NCBI RefSeq assembly: GCF_964194025.1
Contig: NC_134469.1
Location: 17,670,001 to 17,734,000 of the forward strand
From: Convolutriloba macropyga
Taxonomy: Eukaryota
Reading direction: 5' to 3'
DNA: 64,000 nt
The notes under the pieces are model-generated. The model was not told the origin of the DNA. It ran no database searches and worked only from the letters and a program-made list of their open reading frames with translations. The position numbers and the translations under genes are program-made. Positions 1 to 53,047 of the stretch are shown here, in pieces. Within the stretch, counting starts at the first letter, position 1, and the number at the start of each line of letters is the position of its first letter.

Positions 1-148
1 TTTGCCACAGCCCACTCTGACCTCTGAACATATATAGATATAGCGTGTTTTCCCAATGCAAAACAAAAATATAGAAATCAATATAGTACTTCTGTGACAA
101 AAGGAATGTGCGTTATATTCCAACATCACTAAATTGACAGGGGGAGAT

Positions 149-149
<1 letters not shown>

Positions 150-219
<70 letters not shown>

Positions 220-234
220 GGGGGGGGGGGGGGG
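150..234. repeat. (GT)n microsatellite followed by poly-G
   Basis: Directly visible; it explains the spurious VCVC start of ORF 134..520. Confidence 0.95.
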
Positions 235-334: not shown

Positions 335-3300
335 ATGAGGCTTTTGAAGTTGTGGTACAGCTTCTTTTATTGTTTCTGGATGGGTATTTATGGAGTGGCT
401 GCCTTTGTGCCTTATGTGGACTTTGAGGCTATCGAGCAACTCACTCAATCAGATCTGAGCCTCCTGTTCCCTGTTGACGAAATCACAGGTAAAACACTTT
501 TATTACAACTATTTACTTAAGGGGTCCTTCACACTATAACCCTTGCCCCCCACAAAATTAAAGCTTGGGGGGGGGGGGGGGACAAACAGAAAACATCCAG
601 AGATCTTCGTTGACGCTTTTTGCTTAAGGTAGAAAAGACAGCATAATAGTGGATACAGTGTTCAAAAGTCAGGCACTGGCAGGCACAACATGCGGAGACC
701 ACATTGAGATCATATTCCAGTGTATCTTCCATGTCCATCAGAACCAACAGGAGGAAGAAGCTCACAAGAAGCGTTCCTTCCAAATAATCGATGCATGGGG
801 CAAAACAGAGTCTGGCATAACCCAGGGTAACCTTAACTGGCTAGGGCGACCTTCACTCTGCAAGCTTACGTTCCAAGTAGATGACGGATCAGTTTCGTAC
901 ACTTTTGACTTTTTGGCCAGTATCGTACAGTTTAAGCTGGCAGGTGATCATGTGAAAATCCGGCTCTTCTCTTCAAGTTGAAAGTGAATCTAAATATATA
1001 TATATCTACCTGCAGTAGCCTAAATTACGGATCCTAATGTTTAGCAAACGATTAGAGCAAGTTCTTACGAACACTCGCCAGTGAAAACTTGGAAATAAAA
1101 TGAGCTTTGGTAAAAGTAACAAAAAATATTTACAGTCAAGGTCTGAGATAGATCGAGAGTGGTAATTTTGAAATTCATTGTCCTGTGATTATTTCTGTTT
1201 TTGAAGAAAATAATTAGAGAGCAATTTTTGAAATGTGATTGTTTTGGAGTCGGGGGCTTTACGATAATAAGAAATTGTTTCGTTATTTTTCAAGAAATTT
1301 TTGGTCTTTCCCATTATAGCCCCCCATGAAACTATAGCCCCCCATTATGGTATAATTACCATGATGGGGGGCTATAGAATATCTGACGACTAAGCTGGGG
1401 GGGGGGGGGGGCTATAATGGGAAAGACGCGAAATTTTGTTTTTGGAATTCGAAGGTATCATGATCAAACAAGTGCATTCAATGCATCGTGGGAGAATGTT
1501 CTTGATACAAATAAAATTTAAAAAACTTCAAAAACAGTTGGGCACCAGATTAGAAGCTATTCTGCCCCCCCCCCTCCCCCCGACCCCTCACTCACAAATT
1601 ATGAGTATTTATGTAGCTCTTTACTATGTAAAAATGTAGCAGGTGCGCCTTTGTTTGGAGGCGTAAAAGTAGTATGATGGCAAAGCTGAAGGTCACACCA
1701 GATCATGAAAAATCTGACAACCTGCGCTGAAATCCTAAAAGAGAGCTAATGAAAGAAAGAAGCTGTTTTCCTGTTTTCCCACAGATAAAGATGGTTTTGT
1801 CATTCTTACATAGGACACGACAAATGTTTGATATCACCAGCGTATGACTAAAAATTATGCCCATATAAGCTCTATATTCTGATATTTCCGTGCTCATTCC
1901 AGTTCCATAAACACATTTTTCTATTCTCAATATCACATTTGAAGCTATTCCGATTTCCCCTTCCCCAATGTTTTTACAACCCCCACTTACAAATTATGAG
2001 CAGTCATGTAGGTCGTCACGACTTTAAAACTGGTAATAAATTTTTCCATCAGCGAAATTGCTAAAAAGTTAATGAAAAGTTAGAATTCAAAACCGTTAAA
2101 GTTTAAGTATCTTACATTGAGAGCGTTAAATGTGTTTAAGCCAAATAATATCAACGCTAAGTTTTCCTAACTAAAGTTTTCAGCGCCAAATCTTTCATAA
2201 ATTTAACGCCTTTGCTGCAAAGTTTGCAAGAAAACTTCTCAAAAAATTTCTCTTCCTAGGTTTCAATTTCTCAAACTCTGACATGCTGCTGATTTGTATA
2301 CAACTGTGCGCAAACGAGTTGAAATTGACAAAAAGATGCTTCACTCCCATTAAAATTAAAGAAGTCGCCTGATTGATTGACGGCTTGAGCGTTATTATGA
2401 TAAGAAATTTAGGTTTAGAAAACCACCATCTAATTTTCGAAAAAAAACTGTGAAAGCAAATTTTGTTTAAAACCCATTTTGTTTAAAACAAAAGAATAAA
2501 TTCATTCAATTATTTGATTTATTCAATCAAATAGAGATAATCTAACGCATCCTTTTATTACTTAGCGGCGTTGCTAATTATCATTTTTAATGAGATACGC
2601 ATCAATTCAACGTTTTTTCTGAAATACTGTTTTTGCTCAGTTACAAAGACTGACTGTACATGACCCCAAAATTTTTTTGAGATATTAGGTGTGGTCAGTA
2701 ACTTAGATTCAGTATGTTCGGTTTTATACGCAAGAAATTGTACGTTTTTTATTACAAAATTGAGTTTTTTTATATATAATGTAGTCAAACGTTATGTTGA
2801 ATTTATAATCACAGGAGTTCCAAACGTACCTCTGGAACATAATTTTTGAAAAAAACAAAATTTGGTCGGCTTCCTTCTTTAGCTCATTTATAAAGCTAGA
2901 TGCACAAATTTCGATATTGTTTGTTCTGAAGTTGAAATTTTAAAAGAAGCGTTAAACATTAACGGGGATTCATTTCGTTGAACCACACTCACTGAGTCTT
3001 GAAATGGTCATGAAAAATCAAGTACGCAAGTACTTTTCTCATGATTTCCTATGTTTTGAACCCGAGCATATCAATGGTTTATTCCGTTAAAAACCAAACA
3101 TTCCGAACTGCCGAAAATGAATTTAGCAAATTTAAGAAACCTAACATAACGACAATTTTACGTTTAAAGTGAATATACGGAATCTAAGAGACTAAACATA
3201 CCGACAACTTCTTTCGTTTAAAACCGAACATACCGACGGTAGCAAAAAATAAAACATAAAAATTTTTGTCGTTTATGTATAACCAAAACCGAACATGTTG

Positions 3301-6300
3301 AAAATTTTCTCAAGTTTACAAACGACTGTTTCTGATAGGATCAGTATAGATTGCTACTGAATTGAGCAACAACATTAATAATAGAAAATAGGAAAAGAGC
3401 CTTTGTTAAGGGGCGAACTACACCAACCCCCTCAAGACCAAAATCAACATAGTCCTGTGTCTCCCAGCTGACTGTCAAGCAGGACATCTCATGAAGTTGT
3501 TCAATGTGTCCAGATCCAATTTTCAGGGAACTGTTTCTACAATTTTTTCACTCTTCTTCTAATGAACGGCTTTAGGAGAACATACCTTTTTTTCTTCAAA
3601 AATTATGGACCGCTACCATGTATGAATTGGCACGACTAAAAAACTCGATTAAATATACTCGTATTATTAAGCGAAATCCGGTTTACAATCTTAACGAGTG
3701 TTTCCAATTGGGTTTATGCTTTCAATTTTTGCTTTTTTCAACAATTCATACCATACAAGGCAATATTTTCTTATATTACCATATAAGAAAATTTCTGTTA
3801 TGTTTTACTATAAGGAAAATCGGATCAAACTAATTAATACAATTAAGAAGTAGTTAAACGCCATTTTGGTAAGCAAAACCAAATAGACTAAATTTCGCCA
3901 ATTCAACTATGGCACTTGTAAGGGAAATTCTTGATAGTCTTAAATTTAGACTTCTACATTTATATATTTAGCGCAGACCAATATCTATCTGCCAAGTAAA
4001 TTCTTCTTCTCGATGGTGCGGGCTTTGAATTTTTTTAATCTGATATACTGCAATTAAATAGTTGCGAATGTAAAGTTTTTACTCCGCTGACTAAAATTGT
4101 GAAGTTACCATTTCCTAAATTTGTGAGTTTCAACACAGAAAACTGTAACAAATTCGCATTTTTTGTAACTTTTGATTTACTTTGATGAGAGAAACATTTT
4201 CCCTGTTTTCCCCATGAACAGCTGGAGCCACTGCGTGTGTACTTTGAGGACAATGGGGATTACAATGTGGCCTTCATTCTAGCTGTCATTGTATTGGGTG
4301 TATTTCTCATACTCGTCATTGCAGGTGACATAATCAATTATTATCCTCACGTTATTCATTCTTCATCAACAAACGTAATCTGAGGAGCCAAAATGTCAAT
4401 TCAAGCAATAAATATATTAATTGGATTGGACAGCAGCTTTTCCGAATTTTACAGAATACATGGAAAACTGTTGATCATTTTCTAGAATTTGGATTACTAT
4501 GCGGGTATAATCAGATTAAAGTAGACTTTTTAATATTGGCTCAACTGTTTAGAACTGTCAAAAATCAGAATTGATGACAGAAGTTCTCGGTTTTCTAAAG
4601 GAAATAGAATTGAAGTTAAGTTTTAATCTAATTAGGTAATAATCTATTTTTTGATTTCTGGTTTTGAAAAAATATGTGTAAAGTACGTGTAACTAGTTGC
4701 TTGCAAGATTCTTGCAAGTTTCTATATTCATTTGCAAGAATCTTGTAAGCTTTTTCATTCATATGCTCGGGAAAGGGGGCCGCCAGAGAGGTGAAGTGGA
4801 TTTTTGCAGTAAAAAATTGAAAGATTGTTTTGAATCAGCTTGCAAGATTCTTGAAAGCCTTAAATTCACTCATCACTAGGGGTGGCACGAACGGGAAAAT
4901 GCCAGATTTCATCGANNNNNNNNNNNNNNNNNNNNNNNNNNNNNNNNNNNNNNNNNNNNNNNNNNNNNNNNNNNNNNNNNNNNNNNNNNNNNNNNNNNNN
5001 NNNNNNNNNNNNNNNNNNNNNNNNNNNNNNNNNNNNNNNNNNNNNNNNNNNNNNNNNNNNNNNNNNNNNNNNNNNNNNNNNNNNNNNNNNNNNNNNNNNN
5101 NNNNNNNNNNNNNNNCCCGCTCATCCACATTCTTGACTTAATTGGCTACCAAATAATGAAAGCGATATATATTTTTTCAAAAAACATACACATCGTTCAA
5201 TAAACAACCAATGAAATACGATAACGCCATGCTAGAGGGCCAATGAAAATAGTTGATGAAAATAAGCTGAGGATTACTAGAAAGGACAAAAATGAAAATC
5301 AAACAACAAAGATTATTTACGACCAAAACTATAATAAAGTCTATATAAAGTCTATAATAAAATATATTAATCAAATCTATAATAAAAAAATCATAACAAA
5401 ATCAAACTCGCATCAGATAAAAACCAAAACATTTAAACCTATATTTCATTAGAAAAAACATGGACGTGTTTTCAATGCGATTGGTTAACAGGTAGACAAA
5501 AAGGAGGAAATAAGTGCGAAGTTCAAAAATACTTTTCCATTTTTGAAATCAATTAATTGCACAATTATTATTGTCATTACATATCAACTGAAAACACTAA
5601 AATGTTCAGTTATATCCACATAGGAAGCAATTGAGACAAGTCACTATCCAATGTTCGATGGCGCAAATTTTCAATGCCAATGGACCAACGATTATTGTTA
5701 TAATTTAAAAAGAAACCAAAAATTTTATGAAATATAGAAAAATATAAAAATATAACATTTTACCAAATCTCGTGGTAGCAAAAGTAACAAGCCAAGAAAC
5801 GAACAATTTCTTTCAACAAAAGCCGTTATAACGATTAACATATAGCTCACGGGAGACGCACTGTTACCTGTTTACACTGAGCTACAAATCAACCGAAAAA
5901 CTCTATAAAAAAGACGAAGCTCAAAAACCCAAACTTATTTTTGAAAACAGATATATTCAAAAGTCAGAATAGACTAAAAACATACAACAAAAAGTGATGG
6001 ATTAAGTTTCAACAACTCATGAAGCCAATTGGACCTGTAAATAATGAGACTAAGTAACGAGCCCACAAACAAACGAATTCGTAAAGAAGCCAAAACTTCG
6101 AACAATTTTGCAACATGACACTGCTCAATGCACTATTATATGATGTAACCTGCAAGAACTAAAAATCACTATTTTCTTTTCATCTTAACATCAACGAATC
6201 CTCCTTATAAAAGGACTACTTCGACGTGACAACAAAAAGAAAACCGAAAATTGTACATAATCTCGAAATTTTTAATTAAAATAAAAGGTCGAAGCAATCA

Positions 6301-9300
6301 GTTACAACGCATAACCCAGCGCCAATTTTTATTTCGAATCAACAAAAGTATTTGATAACTCTAATAAGTGAGATAGAGTAACATGGTGACGAAAATAAAA
6401 GAGAAAAGGAGACAAATGAAAAAAAAATCTTTTTTTTTTTAAATTTTAATTCGAAAGTCGTTAGAACAAACAGCTTTAAGTTGAAATCTTCAACTCGGTT
6501 GCGTTATACGTCTTTGGGAAGCAATTAAGGTCTATCGGTATTGGGTAAATGGCGTACAACAACGAAAAGAAAGACAAACTTAGGCAAAATCAAAAACCCA
6601 CAAAATTTTGCGAGATAACCGTGTCTCAGCCCAAAAAGCAAAACTATTCAACAAAAACTATTAACACGCTAGATACGCCTTTTTCCAACGTTATGCATTT
6701 TTCCTACAATCCCTTCTTTTATTTGGACTTGTCAGAAGTGTGATAGTTCGACAAGAAAACAAAATAAACATAAAATTTGCAATTTTGCTAAAAAAAAAGA
6801 AAAATTGAGAACACATAGTACCAAAATAATGAAACATTTAGTTGAATTTAAAACCCTTGCCGACATTTATTTATTCATCAAAGGAAGCCGGTTTCCAATT
6901 ATATTTACTGAGAATGCGCCCAAAGTTGAGAGAAAAAAGAAAAATAATGGCAAAGTTCAGAAATTCACCGACCTTTTTTCAAAAAATATATATTCAAAGT
7001 CTTAACAGACATTAGATAACAACTGAAAAAAATGTCTAGGTTCTTTTATACCTTCTTGAAAAGAAATGGAATTTTAATTGGGGACACTAAGTCATTGAAC
7101 TACAAAAATCATAAGAAATGAAAACAAAACGCAAGAAGTCTATAAAGTCTTTACGAAAACAATTCGTCAGAGCCATGAAAACCGTGAGCTTAATTCTGAA
7201 AACATAATATAATGTAGCTCGTTCTTATTTCTTGTAATTAATATCTGTCAATAATTAAGCCCTGATTTGAATATCTTGTCCGTAATTTACATAATAAACG
7301 TTTACATAGCGGAAAATGTTTGAAAAAAAAGTTCGCGCCCCATTAAAATCTAAAAAAAATTTCATCAAAAGGATTCATGGTGAGATCAAGATCAGCCCAG
7401 ATATTGCTGAGCGTCTGAAAAAACACTCAACTATTGAAATTGGTGCAAAATAGATCAATTCTATACAAAACTGTAAGTTTGTCAAAAATAAATAATGCAT
7501 TTTGTATATTTATCGACAACAAATTTGCCAAAAAATTGAACAAATTATAATTTCAGAAGACTCTTATAGCCAGCTGAAGTACAACTAGCTCTTTTTGAGA
7601 TTAAAACGATTATGGTTGCAAATTAAAGGTGTCTACTTCCAGCAAAATTAAAGCAAGTTGGCTAAAAAAAAGCCCTTTTTCGACGAAAAATTTCAGAATT
7701 TTGAAAAAAATTAGCGTAAATTTTAACCGAAGAACTCATATCCTGCAGTTCAGCAACCCTCCTCTATCTTTAAATATAATTTAAATAACATTACAATTAA
7801 CAATTTTAAAATATTTTGGCATTAATTATGAAAATTTGGTCAAAATTGACGAAATTTTGGTCAAAAATGTGAAAAAAGTAGCTGAATTACGTCTAATATT
7901 CACAAAATTTTAAACCTCGGTCCTATAAAAAACAAAAATTGAAAAAATCTTTTTAGTTCCATATTCTACACTGGACGGGCTTTCTAATGATACCACTCAC
8001 AGCTCTCTACGATTATTATATCGATCGGCCAAAATTGACTGAACAAAAAAAAACCGTTTGAGTTTATAGTTCCTCCCCCCCTCAGAGAGGGGTCGGAACA
8101 ATTAATATTGTTGTATCCCAGCAAGATAAAGACTGAATGTTAAGCATTCCGAAAAAATTTCTAAAATTCTTCCACCGGGAAAAGAAACTAGCTTGAGCTG
8201 AATAAGAGGTCAATAGTTCTCGAAAAACCTATAGTTATTATTATTGCCCCTGATAATAATTTTTTAGGGTGGACTTGGTTCTCAGCAGTGGACTTCCAGC
8301 TTTTCCTTCTGATGGCTGGACTTGTTTATCTCGCATTCAAGCGACCAGTCATCGGAATTGCAGTCGTCTGTGCCCTAGTCGGAGTCTGCATCATAATTAC
8401 AATGATCTTGAGCTCAGTGTATGACCTCCCCCCTGGAGCAACCGCTGGGTTTTTCCATAACGAGTTGTACAGAAAGTATAAAAACACGTGGCAATATTTC
8501 AAAATAATCTACAATAAACCCTACACTCGATTTGCAAGCTATGGTTGCGGGGTCGTTTTGGGTATTGTCATATTCTCCTATCCACAAGCCCAGAGAAATT
8601 TACCCCGAATCGCTGCAATTTGTTTATGGTTTACCGCAATTGGGTTGCAAATGCTTTGTTTATTTTGTGATTACGGTCTGTTTAGTAAGAAGTTTCCCTC
8701 GAAAGGAGGTGCTGCAATGTTTAATGGTTTGCTTCCCTTTATCTGGTCGATGACTATATTCTGGATTATTTGGGCTTGTTGTCAAGGTTACGGGGGTCCA
8801 GCTAATACTTTCCTGTCAATTTATTTCTGGAAGCCACTCGGAAGACAGGAGAGATGTTTCCTGTGATAATAAAATTTTCATTTCATAGTTCGTCTTTTTT
8901 CCAGGAAAGCTTAATCTTTCCAAACTTAAAAAAAGACACTCAACAGAGCAAAATAGTCTTGGGAAAAAATCAATCTTTGTATAAACGTGAATACAGAATC
9001 TCAACCGAGCACTGAATAAATAATAATTTATAATAATTTTGGTTCCGGCGTAATCGCCGCGGAATAGCATTAGGCTACTGCGGCCTGTTCTCACCTATCC
9101 TTTTTCTTATTATCCCCCACATTTTAGACTGTTCATTTTATGGGCAGCATTGCTTTTTTTGGTGACTATGGCACTTTTTTTGCGTCTGAGACTTTCACGT
9201 GGTACCATTATTGCAGCCAACATTGGTCAGGCTATGGTCAACCTGAAGCTATGGTTAAGTAAGAGATCATCCTGACACAGAAAGCTTCACGGAGGCAGGG

Positions 9301-12300
9301 GATTGAACCCTTAATCATTGGCGTGTGACTCACACACCTTACCGGCTTAATAGGGTTGACAATATCAGCATACCATGTGATCAGGAAACACTTCTCTGTA
9401 TTGGGGTGATAGGTATTTATGATCTACCTTATCAACTGTCTCGTGATCCAGTTCTACTACACCACCAACGAGGGCGACTTCCACCTCACAAACTGGTCTC
9501 TCTTCGTCTTCTTCATCGGAAACTTAGGCATCTTTTCATTCTTCAACTACACATTTTTACATTTTTTCCCATTCGGATTCCGTTCTGCAATAAAACAATT
9601 ATACCATTATAGTCGGTACGCTTTTGGTAAATAATCTTTACGCTGTTGCAATCATTTTGAAAAATGAATGTCCAGAAGATATTTTTCATATATTTGTCTC
9701 ACACAAATTTTTTGGCTAAAACTCATTGTATGCAGACATCGTATGCAGACATACGATTTAGATACGATCTTTCTCATATCAGCCTCATATAATTGTTGGC
9801 TTAAATTCATCGTATGCAGACATACAATTCATCATAATGAATTTTTGAAGTTGCCAGAGTAAATTTTTCTGATTTTTTTTTGTACGGAGGCAGTAATAAA
9901 AACATTATTGGCTCTTTCAGGGTTTCAATTCGTTAAGTTTCTGTAAATAAGATATGGCACCAGATTTTTCCAATAACAAAAGTTTTTCGAATCAAAAAGT
10001 GTAAAATATTGATTTGGCCTGTCATATAGACTCTCAATATATGCATTGGCGCTTTGGAGCTGCTTGTTTCAAAAGCTAAAGCTGAAGAATATCGTTACCT
10101 CAGTAAAAACATACAACCAAGAGTATTGTACAGGAAACACAAAAATGTATCTTCATAGCAAAACAACTTTCGAAGAAATTCTGTGGCTCACTTCAAGCCT
10201 TTTAGCTATTATGTGGCTTGAAGCTCCTATTAGCAGCTAAATTAATTTGCACTAGCTCAAAAGTAGTAGAAAGCATATGACATTTCAGTTGATTAAATTT
10301 AGTAATCAATGAAAGAGTCCATCATTTGACTCCTAATACGGGGACCTGACAGATTTTTTGTACAAAAATTTGAATAAATCCAAATATATAAAGTTATATA
10401 AGTGAATACAAACATTTCTTTCATAAAAAGAGTTACTATTACTCTAGTTTTTCTCTAAAAAAGATTTTCTGTTTTCGTTCCCTTTTTGCTGTTCAGTAAC
10501 ACTTCTACTCAAAAACGGAAGTATCAGAAGTTCATAATTGATTTGATCGAATATTAAGGCATTGTCCTAATCTTTATCTGAAGGTCTGCGACATGGTTAA
10601 CTCTGAACACTTGGCAACTCGTACTTAACTTTTAGGTTAATTCAAAGTTGGATCAGAGTGTTTTTCAGAAACAATTATTTTTACTAATTCAGACTCTGTT
10701 GATGTCACATTTTGCTCTGATAGTCTCTGATTCAGACTCTAAATCAAATTTTGATTTTTTTTCTGATTCAGAAGCTGAATCATACTCAGTTTTCAGTCTG
10801 AATTAGTTTAATTTCATGAGTAATTTCGCGGGCCAAGCTAGTTTTTTATCGTTGTTTTCGCTTTTACGTCCTTAGCTAATACAAATTCGTAAATACCTGA
10901 AGAAATTAAGAAAGTTATTTATAGTCGGAAATTTTCTCAAGTTAAAAACTGACTTTGAGATTTTCCAGTTTGCCCTGGATGGTTTTAACCACCTCTTTTC
11001 TTTTTTCCCGGACTTGGGACCGTTAGCGTGTACATACATAAATAAACTATAAGAAAGCTGATATTGCATGGTAAAAACCCGTCTGTAGAGTTTTTCAAAA
11101 CAAAACAAGACATAACAAGGAAAAACGAAATTAAAATAGCCAAAAGGATGTCGGATTTTTTCTCAATTCGAGTAAAAAAAATCTGTCGAGATTTTCCAAT
11201 ATTTCTGGAAGGTTTTACATTTCTCTTTTCACTCCGGGCTTGGGACCGGCAGTGGTGGAATTTCATTTTGATTATGAACATTCTGCTCATTCTGCTGCAA
11301 ACAAGTAAGTTTACAAGCGCCAAAAATTAGTTTTAAAAATTTTCACATCGATTTCGACATCGCAGTTTGCTTTTATGGCACCCAGTGACCAAAATATATC
11401 ACATGTTAATTTGTGAAAAACAGTTTCAGTGCACAATGTTGGAGAAGATGAAAAACTGTGTAGATAACTTTTAACAAAATTTCCATGCTTTTTAGTATTC
11501 GATTCAAAATTGAGAACTTTTTTCGTATCATTTGGGTAAAAATTTGGGATATTTTGGCAATTAGGTGTTTTGATAGTGAGTGTTCTGAAACAGATTAAAA
11601 AAACAAACTTGAGCTCTTAAACATCAGAAAATACTATCGGACCGCTGAACATAAACGTTTGTCCCCTTCTATATGCAAACATGAGATTACCATTATTTGA
11701 TGGTCATCGGGGGTCATAGTGTCATCCTCATAACAGATACAATCAATATGTATTTGATGTCTGTTGCTGCCTCTTAGGCCATATACATTATTAATCAATG
11801 CAAAAACATGCATCAGGTAATAGTGAAGGATGCCAGCGTTTGGGTGTTTCTGCCCTATATGACAGCCCTGTCTCACCTGATAGCAATGTTCCTGACTTTT
11901 CTGTTCGACTTCCCGTTCGGGAGACTGGACGAGATGGTGACTAACTACTTGGATAAACAAGCCATTGAGGAGAAGGAGGCAGACAAGGAAAACGAGGGAG
12001 AGAACGAGGAGGGAGAGGAAGAGGAGGAACCTGAGAGAGGTTAGCTAATCATTCTTCAAACACAAATCTAAACAGCCAGCTACTTGTACTAAATATATTT
12101 TCATCATAAACTCGTAACCTCGATGTTTCTTAAATTAGTCTGCATATACCTCAAAGCTAGCCAAACAACACACAATTTTTTAGTTAAGGAAAAAAGTTTA
12201 ATATTTAACTCTTTTATCAAAAGTTTCTATCAACTTCGATAGCTCCTCGAAAAAAGACGAAGTTCAGAAAACTTCTCAAATTAATATTTCCCAGTTTCGA

Positions 12301-12556
12301 TTTGTCTTTTAAATGATGACTCAAAAGCACCTTTATCGTTGAAGATATCGACAAGTTAAGAAATCGCGTTATGATTCCTGCTATGCTGTTACCCCTCTCA
12401 ATTCACAAATAATTAAGGGTTTCGGTCATTAAATGTTTTGACCCTATAGGCACGAGACGAGGAACAGAAGGAACTGAGGGTACAAGGAGACGGAGGACGA
12501 ACGAAACAGCACCCGAGGGGCCTGAGAGGGAGTCCACTCCTACAGCTGAAGCATAA
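335..12556 (+). CDS. nrf-6: NRF-6-like (nose resistant to fluoxetine 6) O-acyltransferase, multi-exon gene; central exons not visible (gap)
   Basis: Inferred exons: 335-488, 629-943 (NRF motif IDAWGKTESGITQGNLNWLGRPSLC), 3411-3526 (VLCLPADC), 4222-4324 (EDNGDY plus TM helix), 8268-8848 (GWTWFSAVDFQ...YNKPYTR...WACCQGYGG...WKPLGR), 9413-9527, 11866-12039, 12450-12556. Phases are consistent and segments align co-linearly with the paralog at 50569-53047. AATAAA at ~12625. Confidence 0.8.
629..943 (+). CDS. NRF-6-like gene 1, exon 2 (NRF domain)
   Basis: DAWGK-x3-GI-x2-GN-x-NWLG-x4-C motif; acceptor tttttgcttaag, donor CAG|GTGATC. Confidence 0.8.
1304..1427. mobile_element. Small palindromic MITE-like element
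   Basis: Outer inverted repeat gtctttcccattatagccccccc / gggggggctataatgggaaagac, plus a nested near-palindrome ctatagccccccattatggta...taccatgatggggggctatag. Confidence 0.6.
8268..8848 (+). CDS. NRF-6-like gene 1, acyltransferase-3 domain exon
   Basis: ORF 8288..8866 extended to acceptor ttttttag; WTW..A.DFQ, Y.KP..R, GYGG and W.PL.R motifs are shared with the paralog. Confidence 0.9.
9285..9360 (-). mobile_element. Degenerate tRNA-derived SINE head (intronic)
   Basis: The - strand has a B-box GGGTTCAATCCCC at tRNA-like spacing from a degenerate A-box. Confidence 0.45.
9413..9527 (+). CDS. NRF-6-like gene 1, exon VFMIYLINCLVIQ...FIGNL
   Basis: Aligns without gaps to paralog TYMTYLVHILVIQ...FVANA. 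Confidence 0.8.
11866..12039 (+). CDS. NRF-6-like gene 1, last TM exon plus acidic tail
   Basis: LSHLIAMFLTFLFDFPFGRLD aligns to paralog LSYAFAFICVLLLESPVVGIE. Confidence 0.8.
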
Positions 12557-34000: not shown

Positions 34001-37000
34001 TTCTGGACATCATAAAAAGTCCACCACAAAAATCTAGAAATAAGAGACATTCAAACCACAATCTAAGAAACTATTAGAAGCAAAATAAATGAAATGGAGA
34101 ATAAACTGCCAACAGCTAACAACAACATTGAAAAAACCCCACAGTAAAGTCTAGAAATGCAAATGACCTGGCAATTAGAATAAGAGGAATTGATGAAAGT
34201 AAGAAAGAAACCGCTCGTGAAAGAACTGAAGAAGATATACAAGAAATACAGTCAATCCTCAAATTCCTCAAGCTAGACTGCCAAATTACGGACTGCAGGC
34301 GCATGGCTGCTTTCAAAGATGGAAGGCATCGTACCATTCTTGCAACCATGCAATGCATGTATGACAAAACACTCTCACTACTCTCACTCTCAAGATTGAA
34401 ACGATATAGCAAAACAGTGTACATTAGCAAAGACTACTCCCTGCAAGAAGAAGAGCAACTGAACAACTGTCTGAAGAGCAACTGAATCTGACATTATATG
34501 AAAAACAAGATGAAAATTTGGTCGAGTACTCAGACAATGCTCGGTATTCCTCCTGACTCGCAAAAAATACAGAAAAAAAGAGGTATCAATTCTAACGTTC
34601 AATCTACATAGTTTCATTGATCTACCACGAAGATTTGCATTTGCAAACGCTATTATCCCCTACAATCCAGACATTCTTTGCCTAACCGAAACATGGTTCA
34701 CAGAAGAAGTTCCAAACGAAGCACTCTTTCTCAAAAATTATGTCATTCACAGAAATGACAGAACTTCAAAAGGCAGTGTCTCAAAACATGGAGGTGTTCT
34801 AGTGGCATCTGCATTTACAACCCACCTAAAGACAGCTCACACAGATGGTGCAAGCAGAAGTTGAAAGACCTCACACAAACGCTAAAGTTTTTAGAGAAGA
34901 AAACAAAGCCAAAATCAATCATCATTACAGGAGATCTCAACTTCCCAACCACTGACTGGAAACAAATGTCATCACCAGATGAACTTGACAACACGTGGCT
35001 CAACTATTTCATAGATGAAAATTTTGAACAAATGCTAAACTTCACTGACCTTTTGGGGTATAAAAAACAGCTAGATGTCTTCCTAACAAACGAACCACAA
35101 TTTTGGGTCAATTCAAAAATCGAAATCAAAATTAGTAATAACTATGCCCTCAACAACAAAAAATGCTCAGACCATTACGCTTACATAACACGATACGAAT
35201 GCAACTACGATCAAGCGACCGATCGCAGCAGACCAAAATACGCTTACAAAAGAATAGATTGGATTAATTTCAATTGCAACATCTCAAAAAACCCATTTAA
35301 ACCCTATTGTTACAGTAACGTTGACGAACTTCTTAAACAGTGGTATGAATGGTTCAATCGCCTTTTCGATCAAAATGTCCCAAGGGTAACTCAGCACAGA
35401 TCACAGCTCCCCCCGTGGGTGTCAAAAAGCACATCCCATGAAATGAAAAAACTATCAACTTTGAAACGAAAAGCAATTGCCCATCCAAGTCCTGCTCCAA
35501 GCACACTAAACAAAATAGATTGTCTCGCAAAAAAAGTCAACACACTTTGTGAAAACGATCAAGTCATCTATGAAATCGAGATAATCGCAACACGTCAATT
35601 CAATGTTTTTCAAAAATATTTACGATCAATTAAAAAAGTCTCACCATTCCCAAGCGAGATGCACCTAAATGAACAAACTGCTAACACTAATGAAGAGAAA
35701 GCAGAGTTGTTCAGTTTATTTTTCCAGAGTGTTTTCAATTCAAAAACATCAAAAGTTGAGAACCAGTTCAATTTTGAAGAAAAAGATCTTAATCGCTTTG
35801 ATATTTCAGAAAAAGAAATTGAAAGTATTCTAAATAAATTTGATACTAGTAAAGCCAACCGCCCTGATGATATAAGTAACCTGTTTCGGAAAAATCTATC
35901 AAAAACAATAAGCAGATCCTTACTTCTACTTTTTCAAACATTCATTAACAAAGGTAAATTTCCAGCATATTGGAAACAAAGTGACAAAACACCAATAAAC
36001 AAAGAGGGCGATAAAGCCGCAATCAATATGTATAGACCAATTAATTGCTCATGTTGCCTCTCAAAAGTTTTCGAGAAACTTATGTTCAACAAACTCTATG
36101 AGCACGTTAAAGGAACACTTACGATTCTCAGTTTGGTTTTCGGCCTCAACGTTCACCAATTATTCAAATGTTATGCTTTCTAGACCAACTGTACAAAGAA
36201 GTCGACTCAATTGCACATGATGAACTTTTCGTTTTCTACCTGGATTTCCAGAAAGCGTTTGATACAGTACCCCACCACAGCGTTGTCGCAAAACTGTCGG
36301 AATCAGGGATCGGGGGAAAAGCGCTCAGATTAATAGCCAACCACTGCGACGACAGAAAACAACGTGTTCGCATTGGAACGGCAAAGTCGAGCCTTTGTAA
36401 CGTCACTAGCGGCGTACCGCAAGGTTCAATCTGGGGCCACTACTTTTTCTCGTCTAGCTAAATGATTTACCACAAAAAATCGAATACAGTCAAACCTACG
36501 GTTATGCTGATGATTACAAATTGCTCTCTAATAACAAATATGAACTTCAAATTGATCTCCAGAAATTAAATGAATGGTGCAACAACAACGAAATGCGCCT
36601 CCATGAAAACAAATGCAAGATCCTTTGTTTCAAGAAAAAGTCGCTCTTTACAAAAAAAAATGAAACTGTCAACATCTCGTCTCATCAAAAAGATCTCGGA
36701 ATACAAGTTTGTGATAACCTCACTTGGCATCAAAACGCAAGCACACGAGCCTCCAAAACTCTTAAAGAACTTTGGTACCTCAGAAGAAATCTTCACCAAA
36801 TGCATACAAGGGTTACATTGTACCAATTATATCCTACGCCTGTCAAGTGTGGTATTCGTCTAAATGCGATCTAGTACTCATCGAAAGAATCCAAAAAAGT
36901 GCAACAAAATGGATAATAGGTTCTTCTCTCACATATAAGGAACGTTTAATCAAACTGAAAATTCGACCTCTATCTCTTTACTTCGAACTTCACAGCTTAC

Positions 37001-40000
37001 TACTGCTATGTGATCTCATAAACAATAAATACAACATTGTCATAGAAAAGTCTATAGATTTCAACAACAATAAACGGACAAGACAAGGCGCAAAATGTGA
37101 AATCAAACTTACGAAAAAACTATTATTCAAAAGCGACGAAAATTTCTGGTCGAGAACAGCCTATCTCTATAATATTGTCAACAAACACACAGACCTTACA
37201 GACAACAAAAATATAAAATATCGGATCAGCGACATTTATTGGAAATTCTTTTTTCGAAGTTTTAACGAAATTGACATGTGCACTTGGAGAATTTGCTGCC
37301 TGTGCAAAAACTGTAACCCTATTTCAAAACTATCTCATTTATAACGATCAATAAGGGTGCTTCAACCCGTGCATTGCAGAAGCCTGAACTACTACTACTA
37401 CCACTAACGAAACTCGACTAACTATGCGTGCTGGGTGAGCAGGTTGCAAGATAACATGGGGAAAGAAAAATATGAGTGGGGTGGGGTGGGTTGGGGCATT
37501 CGAGACTTAGAACAATTCGCTTTTAAATTTCTCTCTTCCACGCACATTCTAATCTGTGCATCGTCAAGACCAGTATAGCCCAAAACAGCCCAGACAAAAA
37601 AACGGTTGTATGTTAAAACGGAGCACGTATTCGTTTGGTTCGTCCTTCAAGTGGTACCCAATTACGCAAAATTATGAAAATGAACGAAGACAACTATTAC
37701 TAGTTCAAGGTCATTTCAAGCTATTCGTAGCCGTAATAGTTTGTTTCAGAAATGGAAAATATTTTTTTAAATAATTGTCATAATGATTTTGATTATGTGG
37801 CTTAAATTATCAGCGGCACAAAATTGTCTCTCAATGTTTATCAAGTTTTTCTTGCAAAAACCCTAAACTGTGTTATGGTAAAACGAAGGAACAAATAGCA
37901 TGTAGAAGTCAAAATGAATTAAGGCAGTTGTATAAAAAGCTGCAAAAACGGGTGAAACGGATCGATCTGTTTGAAAACTTAGCAGGGCAAGGTGTAACAA
38001 AAGTCAAGCAATAAAAAACGTCACAGAAAATTTAAATTTAACAAGCTGATTGATTTCATATCTACTGACGTGTTCTGTTATCGATAAAGCAAATGTGGTT
38101 ACACAATTGAGAAAGAAAGGTTAAATATACAATTTGAAATCTAAGGTTTCAAAGTAATCAAAAATCATTTGGTGCGGCTTTTCAAAACAGGTGGCGTATC
38201 ATCTATACCAAAACCTGCCAATTTTGATAGCTTAAAAAAAGAAATTAATAACAAAGCATTAAAATAAATGTGAGATTAATTTTTGACAAAATAGCAGTGA
38301 AAATATGCGATTAGTACAACAGTTTTGGTTGCTTTCATACCTGTGGAGTTAAATAAAAAATGTAGCGTTTTACGTGTAGCGGCTCCCAACAACTCAAAAT
38401 CGTTTTTCAACAGCAGAATTATGAGGAAAAAATCATTAGTGGCATAAAAGGTAATCAAAAATAAAAAAGGATCAAAGAGTGATTTCTTTTTAAAATCCCA
38501 GTAAGTACGCAAAAAAAGTACAAAATGCAGAATGAGTGCTTGTTGACTGGTGTACAGTCAATTACACATGCGGCAAAAGTGCATGCTATCAGTAGAACTG
38601 AAAACTTCTCTTAGTTTTTCAGGTTCGATATCAAGTATCTTTATAATTTGATTTTTCAAAATTTTTTAAAATAATTAACCACTAATAGACAGATCTCAAA
38701 TGGACAGATCTCTCTGTTTTTCAAGACTTAAAAGTTAGGTTAACAGGTGGGGGACCGGTTGAAAATTGTAGTGAAATTCTAGACGCAGAGAGCTTCAAAT
38801 TGATACATATGCTAGCCTGGGATGCCCTCAAAAAAGTCAACAATTTACTGACCAAAAAATGGGGCTAGCATAAAGTTCTCCCATTTATTTTTTTTTAAAA
38901 ATGCGGGAAGAATTAATTGCTACAATTTTCATTTGTGAGCACCAATGACACATTAGAGCGTCTACAAAAATGGCGAATGGTCAAAGAGTTCTTGAGGAAA
39001 TAGCCGGTGTGGCTCGGCTATCTTCCATTTCTGGTGGGAATAATTACTGCGCCACATATCTGAGACGTATTTGAAAAATTTAACCAGAGAAAACCAACTT
39101 TACCTGAAAAAATTTTCTGTGAGTGTAACTTTGACATATCTTTACGGGGTCGTTGATTGCCTTTGCTATCTAATTTACTTAAAACTCTATTTCCTGTGGC
39201 GTCATCATCAAGCGCCGGACTCCGGCGCTCCTGGATATTCTCAGTATCAGCATCTGAAGCTTCACGCGATTCATTGTCGCTTAGTTGCAACTTCGTCATT
39301 CTGGGTACTAATTGTTCATTTTGTTCTCGGTGTTGAGTTGATACGTTGCGCGTTTGAGGCACCATAGTAGTCGGATTGATATTAGTTCTGTCTGAATAAT
39401 TATCAGTAACTTTTGAGCTTGGAGTCTGTACTCTGGTCTGATAATTCGGTTCTGCAGCTCTCTCTTGTGTTTGAGATGTCACATACGAGTTGTTTTCCCA
39501 GAATCTCGGCGAGTGAGCTAGCTCATGTAGTTTTCTCTGGTGACGGTAATTGAGTCGTTCAAGGTATCTCTCGTATTCCATATTCCAGTCGGGTGCGTTG
39601 TAATAAGCCTTGTAAAACGAAACTCTTCTTGAGTCGTCTTCTTTTGCATCAATATGATAGTCGCCCACAAAATTCAAAATCATCAGGCTCACTTATCATA
39701 TCTGAAAAGATAACATTGAATGCAGCCAGCTATCACATTTTGATCTCGAAGCAACATTTAACATATTTATTACGTTTATTGCATTTCTAAGTTGACAGCG
39801 CAAATGGTTCTTGAACCTTCTATTTCGACGACACAATCTGATTGATAACATTAGCAATTACTTGAAATGATTCGAGAGATAGCTAAATTTCATTCGTTTT
39901 TGTCTCTGAATTATCAGACTAAATCTCATACTTGCCTCCGAATTTTTTTAACCATCGGTCATAAATATTGTACAAAAAAAGAATGTGGAACTGCTAAATT

Positions 40001-50568: not shown

Positions 50569-53047
50569 TTAGCCGATTAACAGTTTCTCAATTCCGACAA
50601 CCGGAGATTCTAACAGCAGAACACAGATGAAGGCGAAAGCATAGGACAAAACAGCATTGGCCACAAACTGAACGGCGTAGGTTGTTGAGCTGAAGTTGAA
50701 AGTGCTGTCGGCTGTCATGTATAAATACTGGATCACAAGAATGTGTACCAGATACGTCATGTACGTCAGTCTGGACAACGGAATCCAGATTCGCATTGAC
50801 AAAAAGGAGTTGATGAAACCAGCGTATCCATACATGCAAGCCCAGATTAACCAGCAGATACAGCAACTCCACGCGGGTCTCGAAAAGCAATTGTACACAG
50901 CAGACATGAATCTTGAAGGGAAATGTCCAGTTGCAACGCCGTATGTTCCGTACAAAACAGCAATTGAGACTCCCCAAAACATAACCCAGCCTAACGCCAC
51001 GAAATACAAGCTAAGTCCTTTGAACTTTGGTGGGCTTTTAAAAACCATAAAACCAAACAGCATTCCGACGCCGTATGAACAAAAGCGGTTCCAGGGTTTG
51101 ATATACAAGTTGATGAAAACACCATCACTGTTGTAATGCTCTTTAGCATGTACGTTAATCATTCGCGAACTTGACGAAGGTGGGTAATTGTTAACATAAC
51201 TGACAATAAAATTGGACAAAGCGGACAATATGGTTAGCGAAGCAGTAGCCGCAAACCCAATTTTTGGTTGTTTGTACATATAATATACAAGAACTGGAGA
51301 AATCGCAAAAAACTGGAAGTCGTTAGCCAAGTACCAAGTCCAGCCAAGGCAGAAGTTAGATGTATACAAGTTGTTCACGTATAACAAATTGGCCCACCAT
51401 GCTTTCTCGCATCCATCGACCTGATTTATGCCAGGTTGCCATCTTGGAACTGAATCATTTCCCAAAACTTTCCAGATTCCAATTGTGAACAAAATGATCA
51501 AGGCCATAGCCGGTGTCAGCCTTATGTACCTTCGAACATAAAACAGGATCCAGAACTTCGCTTTGATATGACCATCCGCTTTCTTCATCTTTTTCAGAGT
51601 GAGGTAAGTCAACAAAAACGCACTGAGAACAAAGAAAGAATCTACAGACAATGTTGCATTGCCTATGACCTGATAGTTGAACCTTTGGAAGTAGCTGAAA
51701 GAGTAAAAGAAGTTGTTCCAATACATGGCAACACCTGGTTGCAATTTAAGCAAATAGTACATTGTATGACCCAGAATAACCCAGCCCAAACTCATAACCC
51801 TGATTCCGTTGAGACACAGAATTGAACCCTCGCCACTCTTTGTTGATATCAATTTCGGAATGTTAGTCGCCAGGGAAAATGCTATCAAGAACTTACACCA
51901 GGGTAAATGTTCAATTTTCATGGATCGCTTTCCAGATTCGCCTTTCTGAATCAAATAAGAGCTCTCAGGATCTCGTTCGTCGTTGATGGCACCCTCGCTT
52001 GACCGGTAGCTGTTTTCTGATTGGATCAGACGATCTCGCATGTAGACAATAAGGTAGTCCAATCCAGTTCCAACCATGACCAAAGCTCCCAATAACAGAA
52101 ACACAAAAACTGCAATCGCGAAGGTAGCATCGTATTTCCCACTATCCTCGCTAAGTAACGCGGTTTTCTCAAATTTAATTACATTGGTGTTGTTCATGAT
52201 GCCGAGTATCGTATCGAATACTGTTAGAATGTCATCACCAGAGCAACGCTTGGAAAAACAGACACCATAGAACACGCTGTATTCGGTTGAGCTGTTGAGC
52301 TGTTCATGTTTTGTTTGATTGTAATTCTAACAAGATGTTGCTGTGCTTCATAGAAGTCCACGTCCCGACATTCGGACGCACGTCCCAGCCAATTAACACT
52401 GCCTTGCAATATTCCTGGCATCGCTTTACCCCACGCATCTATGACCTAAAAGAACGCGCAATTGACCAGCAACCAAGAAAAAAAAGTAACATCTTTTGGG
52501 ATCCAACTCCCGTTCCTGGACAATGACAGTAATGAAGCATGCAAATAAATAACATATGACATCAAAACGTCTGCAATGGATTCAAAAATTTTCCAAGAAG
52601 CGAGCTTATTTTTCTAAAACGCAACCCTTCTTTTCGATCTTCAATAAATTTAGTTACTATTTCCATTTGCAACACCAGTTATCGATATAGCTATGCGTCT
52701 AGGAAAATCATAAACTGATAATAAATTTTACCAAATCAGGATGAAAAAACTTATACTATTCCCCTTTTCAGTCGAAAACTTCAAATTATAACCTTTAAAG
52801 CTCCCACACTTGTGTTCGGACTCTTCAGTTCATTCACGAGCAGTGCAATTTCAGCCCCACATTTAGTACTCACTCCCCACTTATCTGGATCCGATTCCAG
52901 AAACAGGGACAGGATCTCTGCCGGGTCAAAAGAATCCACAGTTTCAAAAGCTTCCACAACGTCCATCGGCTGCAGATCTATGCCAGATCCATACACGTTG
53001 ACTTGGAGTTGAACGCTTGCCAAACAAAAAACCATCAACAACATCAT
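50569..53047 (-). CDS. nrf-6: NRF-6-like O-acyltransferase paralog 2, two exons (53047-52793; 52445-50569), frameshifted at ~52289-52304 in this assembly
   Basis: Signal peptide, NRF motif VIDAWGKAMPGILQGSVNWLG, and LNGIRV/GHT/VDSFF/RRYIRLTP/WTWYLANDFQ/YIKPWNR/PLSRLTY acyltransferase-3 motifs; intron AAG|GTTATA...TTTTAG|GTC. Confidence 0.9.

What the first reader, a model, noticed from the sequence alone, without database searches (positions are those of the whole stretch)
335..12449. Every donor in NRF-6 gene 1 is AG|G with poor +2..+6 consensus
Seen: CAG|GTAAAA, CAG|GTGATC, CAG|GGAACT, CAG|GTGACA, CAG|GAGAGA, TAG|GCATCT, GAG|GTTAGC. All 7 have exonic AG, all four nucleotides appear at +2, and none is GTRAGT. 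The neighbouring - strand gene uses ordinary donors (GTAAGA, GTCAGT, GTAAGT) without needing exonic AG. Inference: either exon-side U1/U5 pairing compensates for weak donors, or the introns arose by insertion with AG target duplication. Two intron classes may coexist in this genome.
Basis: partly seen in the sequence, partly recalled or inferred. Interest (0 to 1): 0.7.

Follow-up and report, generated by a model that had tools for sequence, protein, structure and literature searches.

The report
Exon-end AG needed by weak intron starts
In this acoel worm gene all seven introns follow an exon ending in AG and three start with GG, GA or GC instead of GT, a rule already described in a copepod and a tunicate and seen here in a third animal group, mostly in recently gained introns.

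Summary
Every exon ends in AG, and +2 is T, T, G, T, A, C, T.

The RefSeq model XP_075239645.1 of Convolutriloba macropyga uses the GA, GC and last GT donors exactly. A second assembly has the same letters. Its exon differences are 15 synonymous to 2 non-synonymous, with no indels.

A homologue in another assembly reads straight through the sites of introns 3, 5, 6 and 7. It shares introns 1 and 4. So the non-GT introns are recent.

Among 26 GT donors of actin, tubulin and the neighbouring paralogue, only 10 follow AG, which gives p=0.0012 for 7/7. Every weak or non-GT donor follows AG, and every donor without AG is GT with G at +5 (p=7e-4 without this gene).

The same "AG obligate" rule is published for Eurytemora affinis and Oikopleura. 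I found no paper on it for acoels.

Duplication of an AG target is not supported. GG and GA introns also carry a covarying terminal stem.

The assembled gene lacks a roughly 260-residue middle exon. This scan has noted the same intron class elsewhere in this genome.

The parts
335..488 (+). Exon 1 (start codon, signal-like N-terminus). It ends in phase 1 at donor D1, CAG|GTAAAA.
   Evidence: ORF. The homologue in L086 ends at the same codon with CAG|GTAAGC.
629..943 (+). Exon 2 (NRF domain). Donor D2 is CAG|GTGATC at 943|944. The acceptor is uncertain: 629, 650, 659 and 683 are all in frame.
   Evidence: Pfam PF20146, E=5e-8. tblastn of homologues. The homologue's codons continue 'KLAGANY' across this site without an intron.
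3411..3526 (+). Exon 3. It starts at 3411, not 3453. Donor D3 is CAG|GGAACT at 3526|3527.
   Evidence: 'ANYTNPLK...CLPADC' is conserved in the homologue. The homologue reads ...NNFQ LEPQ... without a gap, so the GT at 3533 is not the donor.
3527..4221 (+). Intron 3, GG-AG, single-copy and absent from the homologue. The terminal stem pairs 3527-3538 (GGAACTGTTTCT) with 4190-4202 (AGAAACATTTTCC). The first AG after the stem is the acceptor.
4222..4324 (+). Exon 4 (membrane helix). Donor D4 is CAG|GTGACA at 4324|4325, in phase 1.
   Evidence: tblastn. The homologue has the same donor position, CAG|GTAAAC.
4325..8267 (+). Intron 4 as assembled. It holds the gap 4916-5115. The exon for about 260 residues (first half of the acyltransferase domain) that the homologue has here is absent.
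   Evidence: No similarity in 4325-8267. No match above 37% identity anywhere in the assembly. A second assembly agrees with the window from 5856 on.
8268..8848 (+). Exon 5 (second half of the acyltransferase domain). Donor D5 is CAG|GAGAGA at 8848|8849.
   Evidence: tblastn E=1e-31. RefSeq model. 84% identical to the homologue.
8849..9412 (+). Intron 5, GA-AG, absent from the homologue and from all paralogues. The stem pairs 8849-8863 (GAGAGATGTTTCCTG) with 9382-9396 (CAGGAAACACTTCTC). A nested high-copy repeat lies at about 9019-9343.
9413..9527 (+). Exon 6. Donor D6 is TAG|GCATCT at 9527|9528, in phase 1.
   Evidence: RefSeq model. 97% identical to the homologue. The read-through frame 9528-9634 carries a 1-base indel in the second assembly.
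9528..11865 (+). Intron 6, GC-AG, absent from the homologue and the paralogues. Its end pairing is weak and no different from that of GT introns.
11866..12039 (+). Exon 7 (last helix and acidic tail). Donor D7 is GAG|GTTAGC at 12039|12040.
   Evidence: RefSeq model. 85% identical to the homologue.
12040..12449 (+). Intron 7, GT-AG. It appears to be absent from the homologue, whose tail is one open frame.
12450..12556 (+). Exon 8, with the stop codon at 12554-12556.
   Evidence: RefSeq model. Three synonymous and no non-synonymous differences between the two assemblies.

Best explanation
The seven sites are real 5' splice sites of an NRF-6 family (NRF domain plus acyltransferase-3) gene of the acoel Convolutriloba macropyga.

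In this genome the only fixed letters of a donor are the exon-end AG and the first intron G. When the exon ends in AG, the intron may begin GT, GC, GG or GA and may lack the usual G at +5. When the exon does not end in AG, the intron has a full GTRAGT-like start.

Inferred mechanism: the ordinary major spliceosome removes these introns. Pairing of U1 (and later U5) with the exon end makes up for lost pairing on the intron side.

The weak and non-GT donors belong to introns gained recently in this lineage. The strong donors belong to old, shared introns.

GG and GA introns have a further aid. Their first 4-5 bases and a TGTTTC core pair with GAAACA plus the complement of those first bases, 7-18 bases before the 3' end. 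The first AG after this stem is the acceptor.

Shown here: the junctions, selection on the exons, the recency of the introns, the AG-versus-weak-donor association, and the stem with covariation.

Inferred, not shown: the snRNA pairing, any role of the stem in splicing, and RNA-level use of D1-D4.
For: Junctions:
- RefSeq XP_075239645.1 maps exactly across the GA, GC and last GT donors.
- A second assembly (L013, 96% identical over 7.1 kb) has identical letters at these donors and at the acceptors of introns 5 and 6. In E5-E8 it shows 15 synonymous and 2 non-synonymous differences and no indel. That gives dN/dS of about 0.04 in the spliced frame. The introns hold 52 indel columns.

Recency:
- The homologue in ENA ERZ25878734 has E3+E4 in one exon and E5+E6+E7+tail in one exon, aligned without gaps at the sites of introns 3, 5 and 6. 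It shares donors D1 and D4.
- At least nine paralogues cover the sites of introns 5 and 6 in one exon.

Association with exonic AG:
- Background donors were resolved against intronless paralogues. 10 of 26 GT donors follow AG.
- The AG-versus-strong-donor table gives p=6.7e-6 for all 40 donors and p=6.7e-4 without this gene and its homologue.
- All six non-GT donors found follow AG. This includes alpha-tubulin CAG|GGATCT and beta-tubulin CAG|GCATGT, both at paralogue-specific positions.

Stem:
- Duplex z-scores are -4.1, -2.2 and -1.9 for the GA and GG introns. They range from -1.3 to +2.0 for 33 GT introns.
- The terminal arms covary around the same core: GGAA/TTCC, GGAT/ATCC and GAGAG/TTCTC.
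- AGGGAWCTGTTTC occurs 180 times in the genome, against 24 for the reversed control.

U1: at least seven of the U1 genes found by Rfam begin with the standard ATACTTACCTGGC.

Precedent: Robertson 2017 (PMC5714493) reports obligate exonic AG for the GA and GG donors of E. affinis, in recently gained introns, with a normal U1 5' end. Frey and Pucker 2020 (PMC7072748) report a conserved AG upstream of GA in E. affinis and O. dioica.
Against: - No RNA reads or transcript contigs could be inspected. The evidence for splicing is a public gene model plus comparative data.
- D1-D4 have no public model. NCBI's coding sequence starts inside E5.
- The gene as assembled lacks a large exon, so its 5' and 3' halves may not be one transcript.
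- The background sample is small: 28 donors at about 16 independent positions, for which p=0.034. It comes from highly conserved genes only.
- 7/7 was noticed post hoc.
- Only three stems with the TGTTTC core were seen. GC introns show no clear stem.
- The snRNA sequences beyond the first 13 bases of U1 were not read. Several lower-scoring U1 copies lack the standard 13-mer, and their 5' ends are unknown.
Confidence: 0.72

Rival explanations
1. The weak and non-GT introns are relics of a mobile element (introner or MITE-like). It inserted into exons, brought its own G-starting end and inverted terminal repeats, and duplicated an AG target that now serves as the exon end and the 3' splice site. 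On this reading the AG|G rule reflects insertion preference, not the needs of the spliceosome.
For: - The introns are lineage-specific.
- GG and GA introns have inverted terminal sequences with a shared TGTTTC/GAAACA core. Two unrelated genes have nearly the same first 11 bases, GGAACTGTTTC and GGATCTGTTTC.
- The 13-mer AGGGAWCTGTTTC is 7.5 times more frequent than its reversed control.
- Transposon-derived introns with inverted repeats, and with splice sites co-opted from target duplications, are known (PMC11282704).
Against: - Intron 3 is single-copy, and the first 135 and last 69 bases of intron 5 are unique in 1.18 Gb.
- Three of four uninterrupted sites in the homologue have no AG.
- No direct repeat beyond (C)AG flanks the introns.
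- Newly gained GT and GC introns (introns 2, 6 and 7, and two in the homologue) follow AG as well but show no stem.
- Only 7.5% of GGAWCTGTTTC sites are preceded by AG.
- The arms covary between copies while the core is kept. This suits selection on pairing at least as well as it suits inherited repeats.
Confidence: 0.25
2. Nothing special: AG|G is the ordinary animal consensus, 7/7 is a chance run in one gene picked out by eye, and the three non-GT donors are rare oddities.
For: - AG at the exon end is the general consensus (Mount 1982, as cited in PMC5714493).
- The p of 0.0012 is post hoc, and the background sample is small.
Against: - The association between exonic AG and weak donors holds in data that exclude this gene (p=6.7e-4).
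- Non-GT donors turned up in 2 of 21 tubulin introns examined, and both follow CAG.
- Three of seven introns in one gene being GG, GA or GC is far above the human rates quoted by Robertson 2017: 0.006% for GA and 0.014% for GG.
Confidence: 0.06
3. Artefact: the gene is a dead copy broken by insertions, and the public model stitches its pieces together. Or the odd letters are assembly errors.
For: - A roughly 260-residue exon is missing from the assembly, and an assembly gap lies in intron 4.
- NCBI models only the 3' half.
- No transcript-derived protein for this gene was found among 15 billion proteins.
Against: - Two assemblies have identical splice-site letters.
- 15 synonymous against 2 non-synonymous differences, and no indel in 976 exon bases, all in the spliced frames.
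- Removing each intron restores the homologue's protein alignment without a gap.
- The read-through alternative at 9528-9634 is frameshifted in the second assembly.
Confidence: 0.05

Closest known systems
GA and GG donors of the copepod Eurytemora affinis (Robertson 2017, PMC5714493)
   Same: - The intron starts with G followed by A or G and ends with AG.
[quoted passage not shown]
- A is usual at +3 (5 of 6 here).
- The introns are idiosyncratic to the lineage.
- The standard U1 5' end is present.
   Different: - A different phylum (Xenacoelomorpha).
- GC donors with poor consensus belong to the same set here.
- GG and GA introns here carry a terminal stem with a conserved TGTTTC/GAAACA core, which that paper does not mention.
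- The frequency in this genome was not measured.
GA-AG and other G*-AG introns of the tunicate Oikopleura dioica (Frey and Pucker 2020, PMC7072748)
   Same: GA is flanked by a highly conserved upstream AG, and the introns are removed in a normal animal gene set.
   Different: - Introns here are long (0.4-3.9 kb). From my own knowledge, Oikopleura has a compact genome with tiny introns.
- No variant U1 with a changed position 7 was found among the U1 copies scored here.
Non-canonical introns of Fritillaria borealis, and introner or MITE-derived introns (Henriet 2019 as summarised in PMC11282704; PMC13326754)
   Same: Species-specific positions, inverted terminal sequences, and coexistence with a minority or majority of old GT-AG introns.
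   Different: - Fritillaria introns mostly start with AG and end with AC or AT. Here +1 G and the 3' AG are kept.
- The introns studied here are not multi-copy, and no target duplication is visible.
Dependence between exon-end and intron-side positions of ordinary U1-type donors (-1G/-2A against +5G), from my own knowledge of the splice-site literature (Burge and Karlin 1997; Carmel et al. 2004)
   Same: Donors that lose intron-side matches keep exon-side matches, and the reverse.
   Different: Here the trade-off extends to the loss of the near-invariant +2 T.

Membership tests
AG-dependent G|GN donors (Eurytemora/Oikopleura type) | The intron begins with G followed by a non-T base and ends with AG. 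| tested here: met
   Intron 3 is GG...AG, intron 5 is GA...AG and intron 6 is GC...AG. Each is the only placement with a 3' AG that restores the protein. Alpha-tubulin GG and beta-tubulin GC introns show the same.
AG-dependent G|GN donors (Eurytemora/Oikopleura type) | AG is obligate at the end of the upstream exon, whatever the phase. | tested here: met
   6 of 6 non-GT donors follow AG, in phases 0 and 1. Background GT donors follow AG in 10 of 26 cases. The sample is small.
AG-dependent G|GN donors (Eurytemora/Oikopleura type) | The introns are lineage-specific and recently gained. | tested here: met
   They are absent from the homologue in another assembly and from at least nine paralogues. 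The tubulin cases lie at paralogue-specific positions.
AG-dependent G|GN donors (Eurytemora/Oikopleura type) | Spliced in RNA. | not testable with these tools
   Only indirect evidence: the RefSeq model, selection in the spliced frames, and gapless restoration of the alignment. No reads were available.
AG-dependent G|GN donors (Eurytemora/Oikopleura type) | The standard U1 5' end is present, meaning no dedicated U1 variant. | tested here: inconclusive
   At least seven Rfam U1 hits start with ATACTTACCTGGC. None of the scored hits has a non-A at position 7. Several lower-scoring hits lack the 13-mer, and only 42 of many candidates were scored.
Introner or MITE-derived introns | Many near-identical copies in the genome. 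| tested here: not met
   Intron 3 has one full match and one 44-base match. The ends of intron 5 are unique, and only a nested repeat of about 325 bases is multi-copy.
Introner or MITE-derived introns | Terminal inverted repeats. | tested here: met
   Met for the GG and GA introns. Not met for the GC introns or the new GT introns.
Introner or MITE-derived introns | Target-site duplication at the junctions. | tested here: inconclusive
   Only (C)AG is repeated, which the splice consensus itself would give. Three of four empty sites in the homologue lack AG, but the synonymous sites there are diverged.
U12-type (minor spliceosome) introns | A donor of the form RTATCCTT and a branch site TCCTTAAC close to the 3' end. 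| tested here: not met
   The donors are GGAACT, GAGAGA and GCATCT. No TCCTTAAC occurs in the last 90 bases of any of these introns.
NRF-6 / acyltransferase-3 protein family (the host gene) | An N-terminal NRF domain followed by a complete Acyl_transf_3 domain. | tested here: inconclusive
   The NRF domain is present (PF20146, E=5e-8), and so is the second half of the acyltransferase domain (tblastn E=1e-31). The first half, about 260 residues, is absent from the assembly. It may lie in the gap.

The most novel reading that the evidence does not exclude
The acoel has a separate class of structure-assisted introns. A terminal stem (the first 4-5 intron bases plus TGTTTC, paired with GAAACA plus their complement) together with an exonic AG defines the 5' cut in place of the GT..G signal. 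The first AG after the stem defines the 3' cut. A few hundred such introns would have spread recently through genes as conserved as tubulin. That would be a new way of marking introns in a bilaterian, and possibly an animal introner family.
Probability: 0.25. Interest if true: 0.8.

Novelty: new member of a known kind. Interest (0 to 1): 0.55.

Why it matters
Gene finders that insist on GT or GC donors will break genes in this genome and probably in other acoels. Knowing that AG|G is the working rule allows correct models.

Acoels sit at or near the base of the bilaterians. A third, independent animal lineage with AG-dependent G|GN donors, concentrated in newly gained introns, gives a comparative system with three lineages. 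That system can address how a spliceosome comes to tolerate loss of the +2 T, and how new introns arise.

The terminal stem with covariation gives a direct target for mutation tests.

Tried and rejected
- My first reading was that the GG, GA and GC donors were model artefacts: an in-frame GT at 3533, a read-through last exon at 9528-9634, or a dead gene. I rejected it on the RefSeq model, the homologue's uninterrupted exons, the frameshift of the read-through frame in the second assembly and dN/dS of about 0.04.
- I searched for a transcript-derived or full-length protein of this gene. The word search with E5, the exhaustive representative search and the word search with E1 gave only genomic ORF calls and the 310-residue RefSeq model. 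The look-up of encoding contigs had no record for P0258.
- Multi-copy test of the introns: intron 3 is unique, and intron 5 is multi-copy only in a nested repeat.
- A scan of the window and of about 350 kb of fetched loci for further TGTTTC/GAAACA stems behind AG|G found only the three known cases.
- Rfam and tRNA scans of the gene region found nothing.
For the same reason the U1 sequences beyond a 13-base pattern, and U5, U6 and the U12-type snRNAs, were not read. I did not try to obtain those letters another way.
- The 176-kb ENA contig that carries P0259 and P0261 spans the assembly gap. I did not fetch it, and the gap was neither filled nor looked up.
All searches used single exons by reference. 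Scripts translated only short windows (up to about 48 residues) across candidate junctions to score them.
Full report
**What the locus is.** The window is C2:17670001-17734000 of an assembly of 1,175,981,408 bases. That size equals the published Convolutriloba macropyga assembly, 1,175.98 Mb (PMC13650328). NCBI proteins named for this species match the genome exactly (P0011 on L002; P0258 and P0260 in the window).

Gene 1 belongs to the NRF-6 family. Exon 2 matches the Pfam NRF domain (E=5e-8). Exons 4, 5 and 6 align to residues 34-74, 310-502 and 505-540 of the large single exon of the - strand paralogue at 50572-52275, and to many NRF-6 proteins.

**The gap, tested first.** The N run 4916-5115 lies inside the intron that follows exon 4. 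No similarity to any NRF-6 protein lies on either flank. So no reading frame crosses the gap.

E4 ends in phase 1 and E5 starts in phase 1, so a direct join would be in frame. It would, however, skip about 235-260 residues of the acyltransferase domain. The closest homologue in another assembly has those residues in one exon between E4 and E5. That exon finds nothing in gene 1's part of the window, and only paralogues at 34-37% identity anywhere in the assembly.

A second assembly of the same species agrees with the window from 5856 onward. The exon is therefore either inside the gap, whose length is only an estimate, or lost.

**The seven donors.** All seven strings are present. The cuts are 488|489, 943|944, 3526|3527, 4324|4325, 8848|8849, 9527|9528 and 12039|12040.

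NCBI's XP_075239645.1 (310 residues) maps without a mismatch to 8312-8848, 9413-9527, 11866-12039 and 12450-12553. The public model therefore uses CAG|GAGAGA, TAG|GCATCT and GAG|GTTAGC. For introns 5 and 6 the same protein can be obtained by sliding the cut one or two bases. Only the GA-AG and GC-AG placements end in AG.

The ENA contig L013 is 96.2% identical to the window over 7.1 kb. It has the same letters at these donors and at the acceptors of introns 5 and 6.

In E5-E8, read in the spliced frames, the two copies differ by 15 synonymous and 2 non-synonymous changes and by no indel. There are 210 synonymous and 756 non-synonymous sites. The three introns hold 52 indel columns. The alternative of reading through 9528 to the stop at 9632-9634 carries a 1-base indel in L013.

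**A homologue in another organism.** P0263, found with exon 1, led to ENA ERZ25878734 contig ctg22341l (L086 and L087). Its only match in this genome is the window's exon 3, at 79% identity. It therefore comes from a different organism.

- Exon 1 ends at the same codon, with CAG|GTAAGC.
- Exon 2 is split by an extra intron, CAG|GTACCC.
- Exon 2 runs on through 'GANYTSPIK' and ends at AAG|GCACCT, a GC donor at a position of its own.
- The rest of exon 3 and exon 4 form one exon that ends at the shared donor, CAG|GTAAAC.
- A middle exon ends at TGG|GTAGGT.
- E5, E6, E7 and the tail form one open frame, with 84%, 97% and 85% identity to gene 1.

The alignments are gapless at the sites of introns 3, 5 and 6. 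This fixes those junctions to the base. It excludes the in-frame GT at 3533, which would add two residues.

At least nine paralogues in this genome also cover the sites of introns 5 and 6 in one exon. Introns 2, 3, 5, 6 and 7 are therefore specific to this lineage. Introns 1 and 4 are older.

**Is AG|G more than consensus?** I resolved donors in actin and in alpha- and beta-tubulin genes by scoring every in-frame junction against intronless paralogues of the same genome.

Of the 26 GT donors (including the paralogue's AAG|GTTATA), 10 follow AG. At that rate 7/7 has p=0.0012. That figure is post hoc.

More telling is the pattern over all 40 donors. All 16 that are non-GT or lack G at +5 follow AG. 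All 17 that do not follow AG are GT with G at +5 (Fisher p=6.7e-6). Leaving out gene 1 and its homologue gives p=6.7e-4. Counting only unique intron positions gives p=0.034.

Two more non-GT donors appeared in this sample: alpha-tubulin CAG|GGATCT (L077) and beta-tubulin CAG|GCATGT (L082). Both lie at positions that other paralogues lack.

Where an intron is present in only one of gene 1 and its homologue, the copy without it lacks the AG in four of six cases. The difference is always synonymous: GCA/GCC, CAG/CAA, TTA/TTG and AGG/CGT. This fits AG being held in place only where an intron needs it. Synonymous sites are diverged enough that it is no proof.

**A stem at the ends of GG and GA introns.** I compared the duplex energy between the first 30 and the last 60 intron bases with shuffles. 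The z-scores are -4.1 (intron 5), -2.2 (tubulin L077) and -1.9 (intron 3). For 33 GT introns they range from -1.3 to +2.0, and for three GC introns from -1.2 to -1.4.

The three stems share one design. The first 4-5 intron bases, a one-base bulge and TGTTTC(C/T) pair with (G/A)GAAACA, one or two bases, and the complement of the first bases. The terminal arms covary: GGAA/TTCC, GGAT/ATCC and GAGAG/TTCTC. The stem ends 7-18 bases before the 3' end, and in all three introns the first AG after it is the acceptor.

AGGGAWCTGTTTC occurs 180 times in the genome, against 24 for the reversed control. The 11-mer without AG occurs 2404 times against 750. Most copies of the core are therefore not behind AG.

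**Origin by insertion?** Intron 3 is single-copy. In intron 5 only bases 171-495 belong to a repeat with thousands of candidate copies, and its ends are unique. No direct repeat longer than (C)AG flanks the introns. Three of four empty sites in the homologue lack AG. Duplication of an AG target is therefore unsupported. An old, decayed element cannot be excluded.

**snRNAs.** Rfam finds at least 25 U1 genes. At least seven of them start with the standard ATACTTACCTGGC, and none of the scored copies has another base at position 7. Several lower-scoring copies lack the 13-mer.

**Comparison with what is known.** Robertson (2017, PMC5714493) found GA and GG donors in about 12% of the introns of E. 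affinis. AG was obligate at the exon end, A was usual at +3, the introns were recent, and the U1 5' end was normal. Frey and Pucker (2020, PMC7072748) report the conserved upstream AG for GA donors in E. affinis and O. dioica.

Fritillaria and introner-type introns share the inverted ends and the recency, but not the kept +1 G and 3' AG, nor the single-copy state (PMC11282704). U12-type signals are absent.

Full-text searches found no paper on non-canonical splicing in acoels.

**Earlier notes of this scan.** They report the same intron class on other pieces of this genome. I used them as leads only.

**Verdict.** The compensation and two-class reading is supported by correlation. The target-duplication reading is not supported. 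This is a new member of a known kind, with a structural twist that deserves an RNA-level test.

**What was not done.** Searches used single exons by reference. Scripts translated only short junction windows.

Noticed in passing
window 4325-8267 (gap 4916-5115): Gene 1 as assembled lacks the exon for about 260 residues (first half of the acyltransferase domain) that its closest homologue has between E4 and E5. No copy above 37% identity exists anywhere in the assembly. Yet E5-E8 are under strong purifying selection.
   Followed up: partly
window 9019-9343 (inside intron 5): A nested repeat of about 325 bases, with about 90% identical copies on every chromosome (2138 first-look candidates, 40 scored). 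No tRNA or Rfam match.
   Followed up: partly
window 50572-53047, - strand: A second NRF-6 gene with a 568-codon single exon. The RefSeq model XP_075265166.1 is flagged LOW QUALITY and bridges a frame break near 52293-52299, where CAGCTCAAC is repeated. Its one intron is AAG|GTTATA.
   Followed up: partly
L086 / L087 (ENA ERZ25878734 ctg22341l): The homologue in another organism has its own lineage-specific introns: CAG|GTACCC inside exon 2, and a GC donor AAG|GCACCT 25 bases from the site of gene 1's intron 2. Intron turnover with AG|G donors therefore goes on in both lineages.
   Followed up: partly
G000 C1:48266398-48281699 and dispersed sites: The U1-like 13-mer with C at position 7 (ATACTTCCCTGGC) occurs six times in one 15-kb cluster. 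The T variant (ATACTTTCCTGGC) makes up about two thirds of the first 100 rows, well above what base composition predicts. Whether any of these is a U1 variant gene is unknown.
   Followed up: no
L077 (alpha-tubulin, C3:20.48 Mb) and L082 (beta-tubulin, C15:17.33 Mb): Even tubulin genes carry paralogue-specific non-GT introns: CAG|GGATCT...TTGTAG with a terminal stem, and CAG|GCATGT...TTTCAG.
   Followed up: yes
window 34861-37344, + strand: A frameshifted fragment of a non-LTR retrotransposon (Exo_endo_phos_2 E=1.7e-4; RVT_1 E=1.3e-5).
   Followed up: partly
window 39021-39692, - strand: A 224-codon open frame matching the Pfam family CCSAP (centriole, cilia and spindle-associated), E=1.5e-10. 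I did not model its introns.
   Followed up: no
window 57300-64000, - strand: At least eight related short open frames (motif 'FVDMKISTQHNAACCSRAIL'), the last three starting about 635-650 bases apart. Tandem Repeats Finder, whose longest period is 500, listed nothing.
   Followed up: no
window 143-234: Two (GT)n runs and a run of 14 G lie about 100 bases upstream of gene 1's start codon. Further long G or C runs lie in introns 1 and 2 (569-581, 1398-1410, 1564-1581).
   Followed up: no
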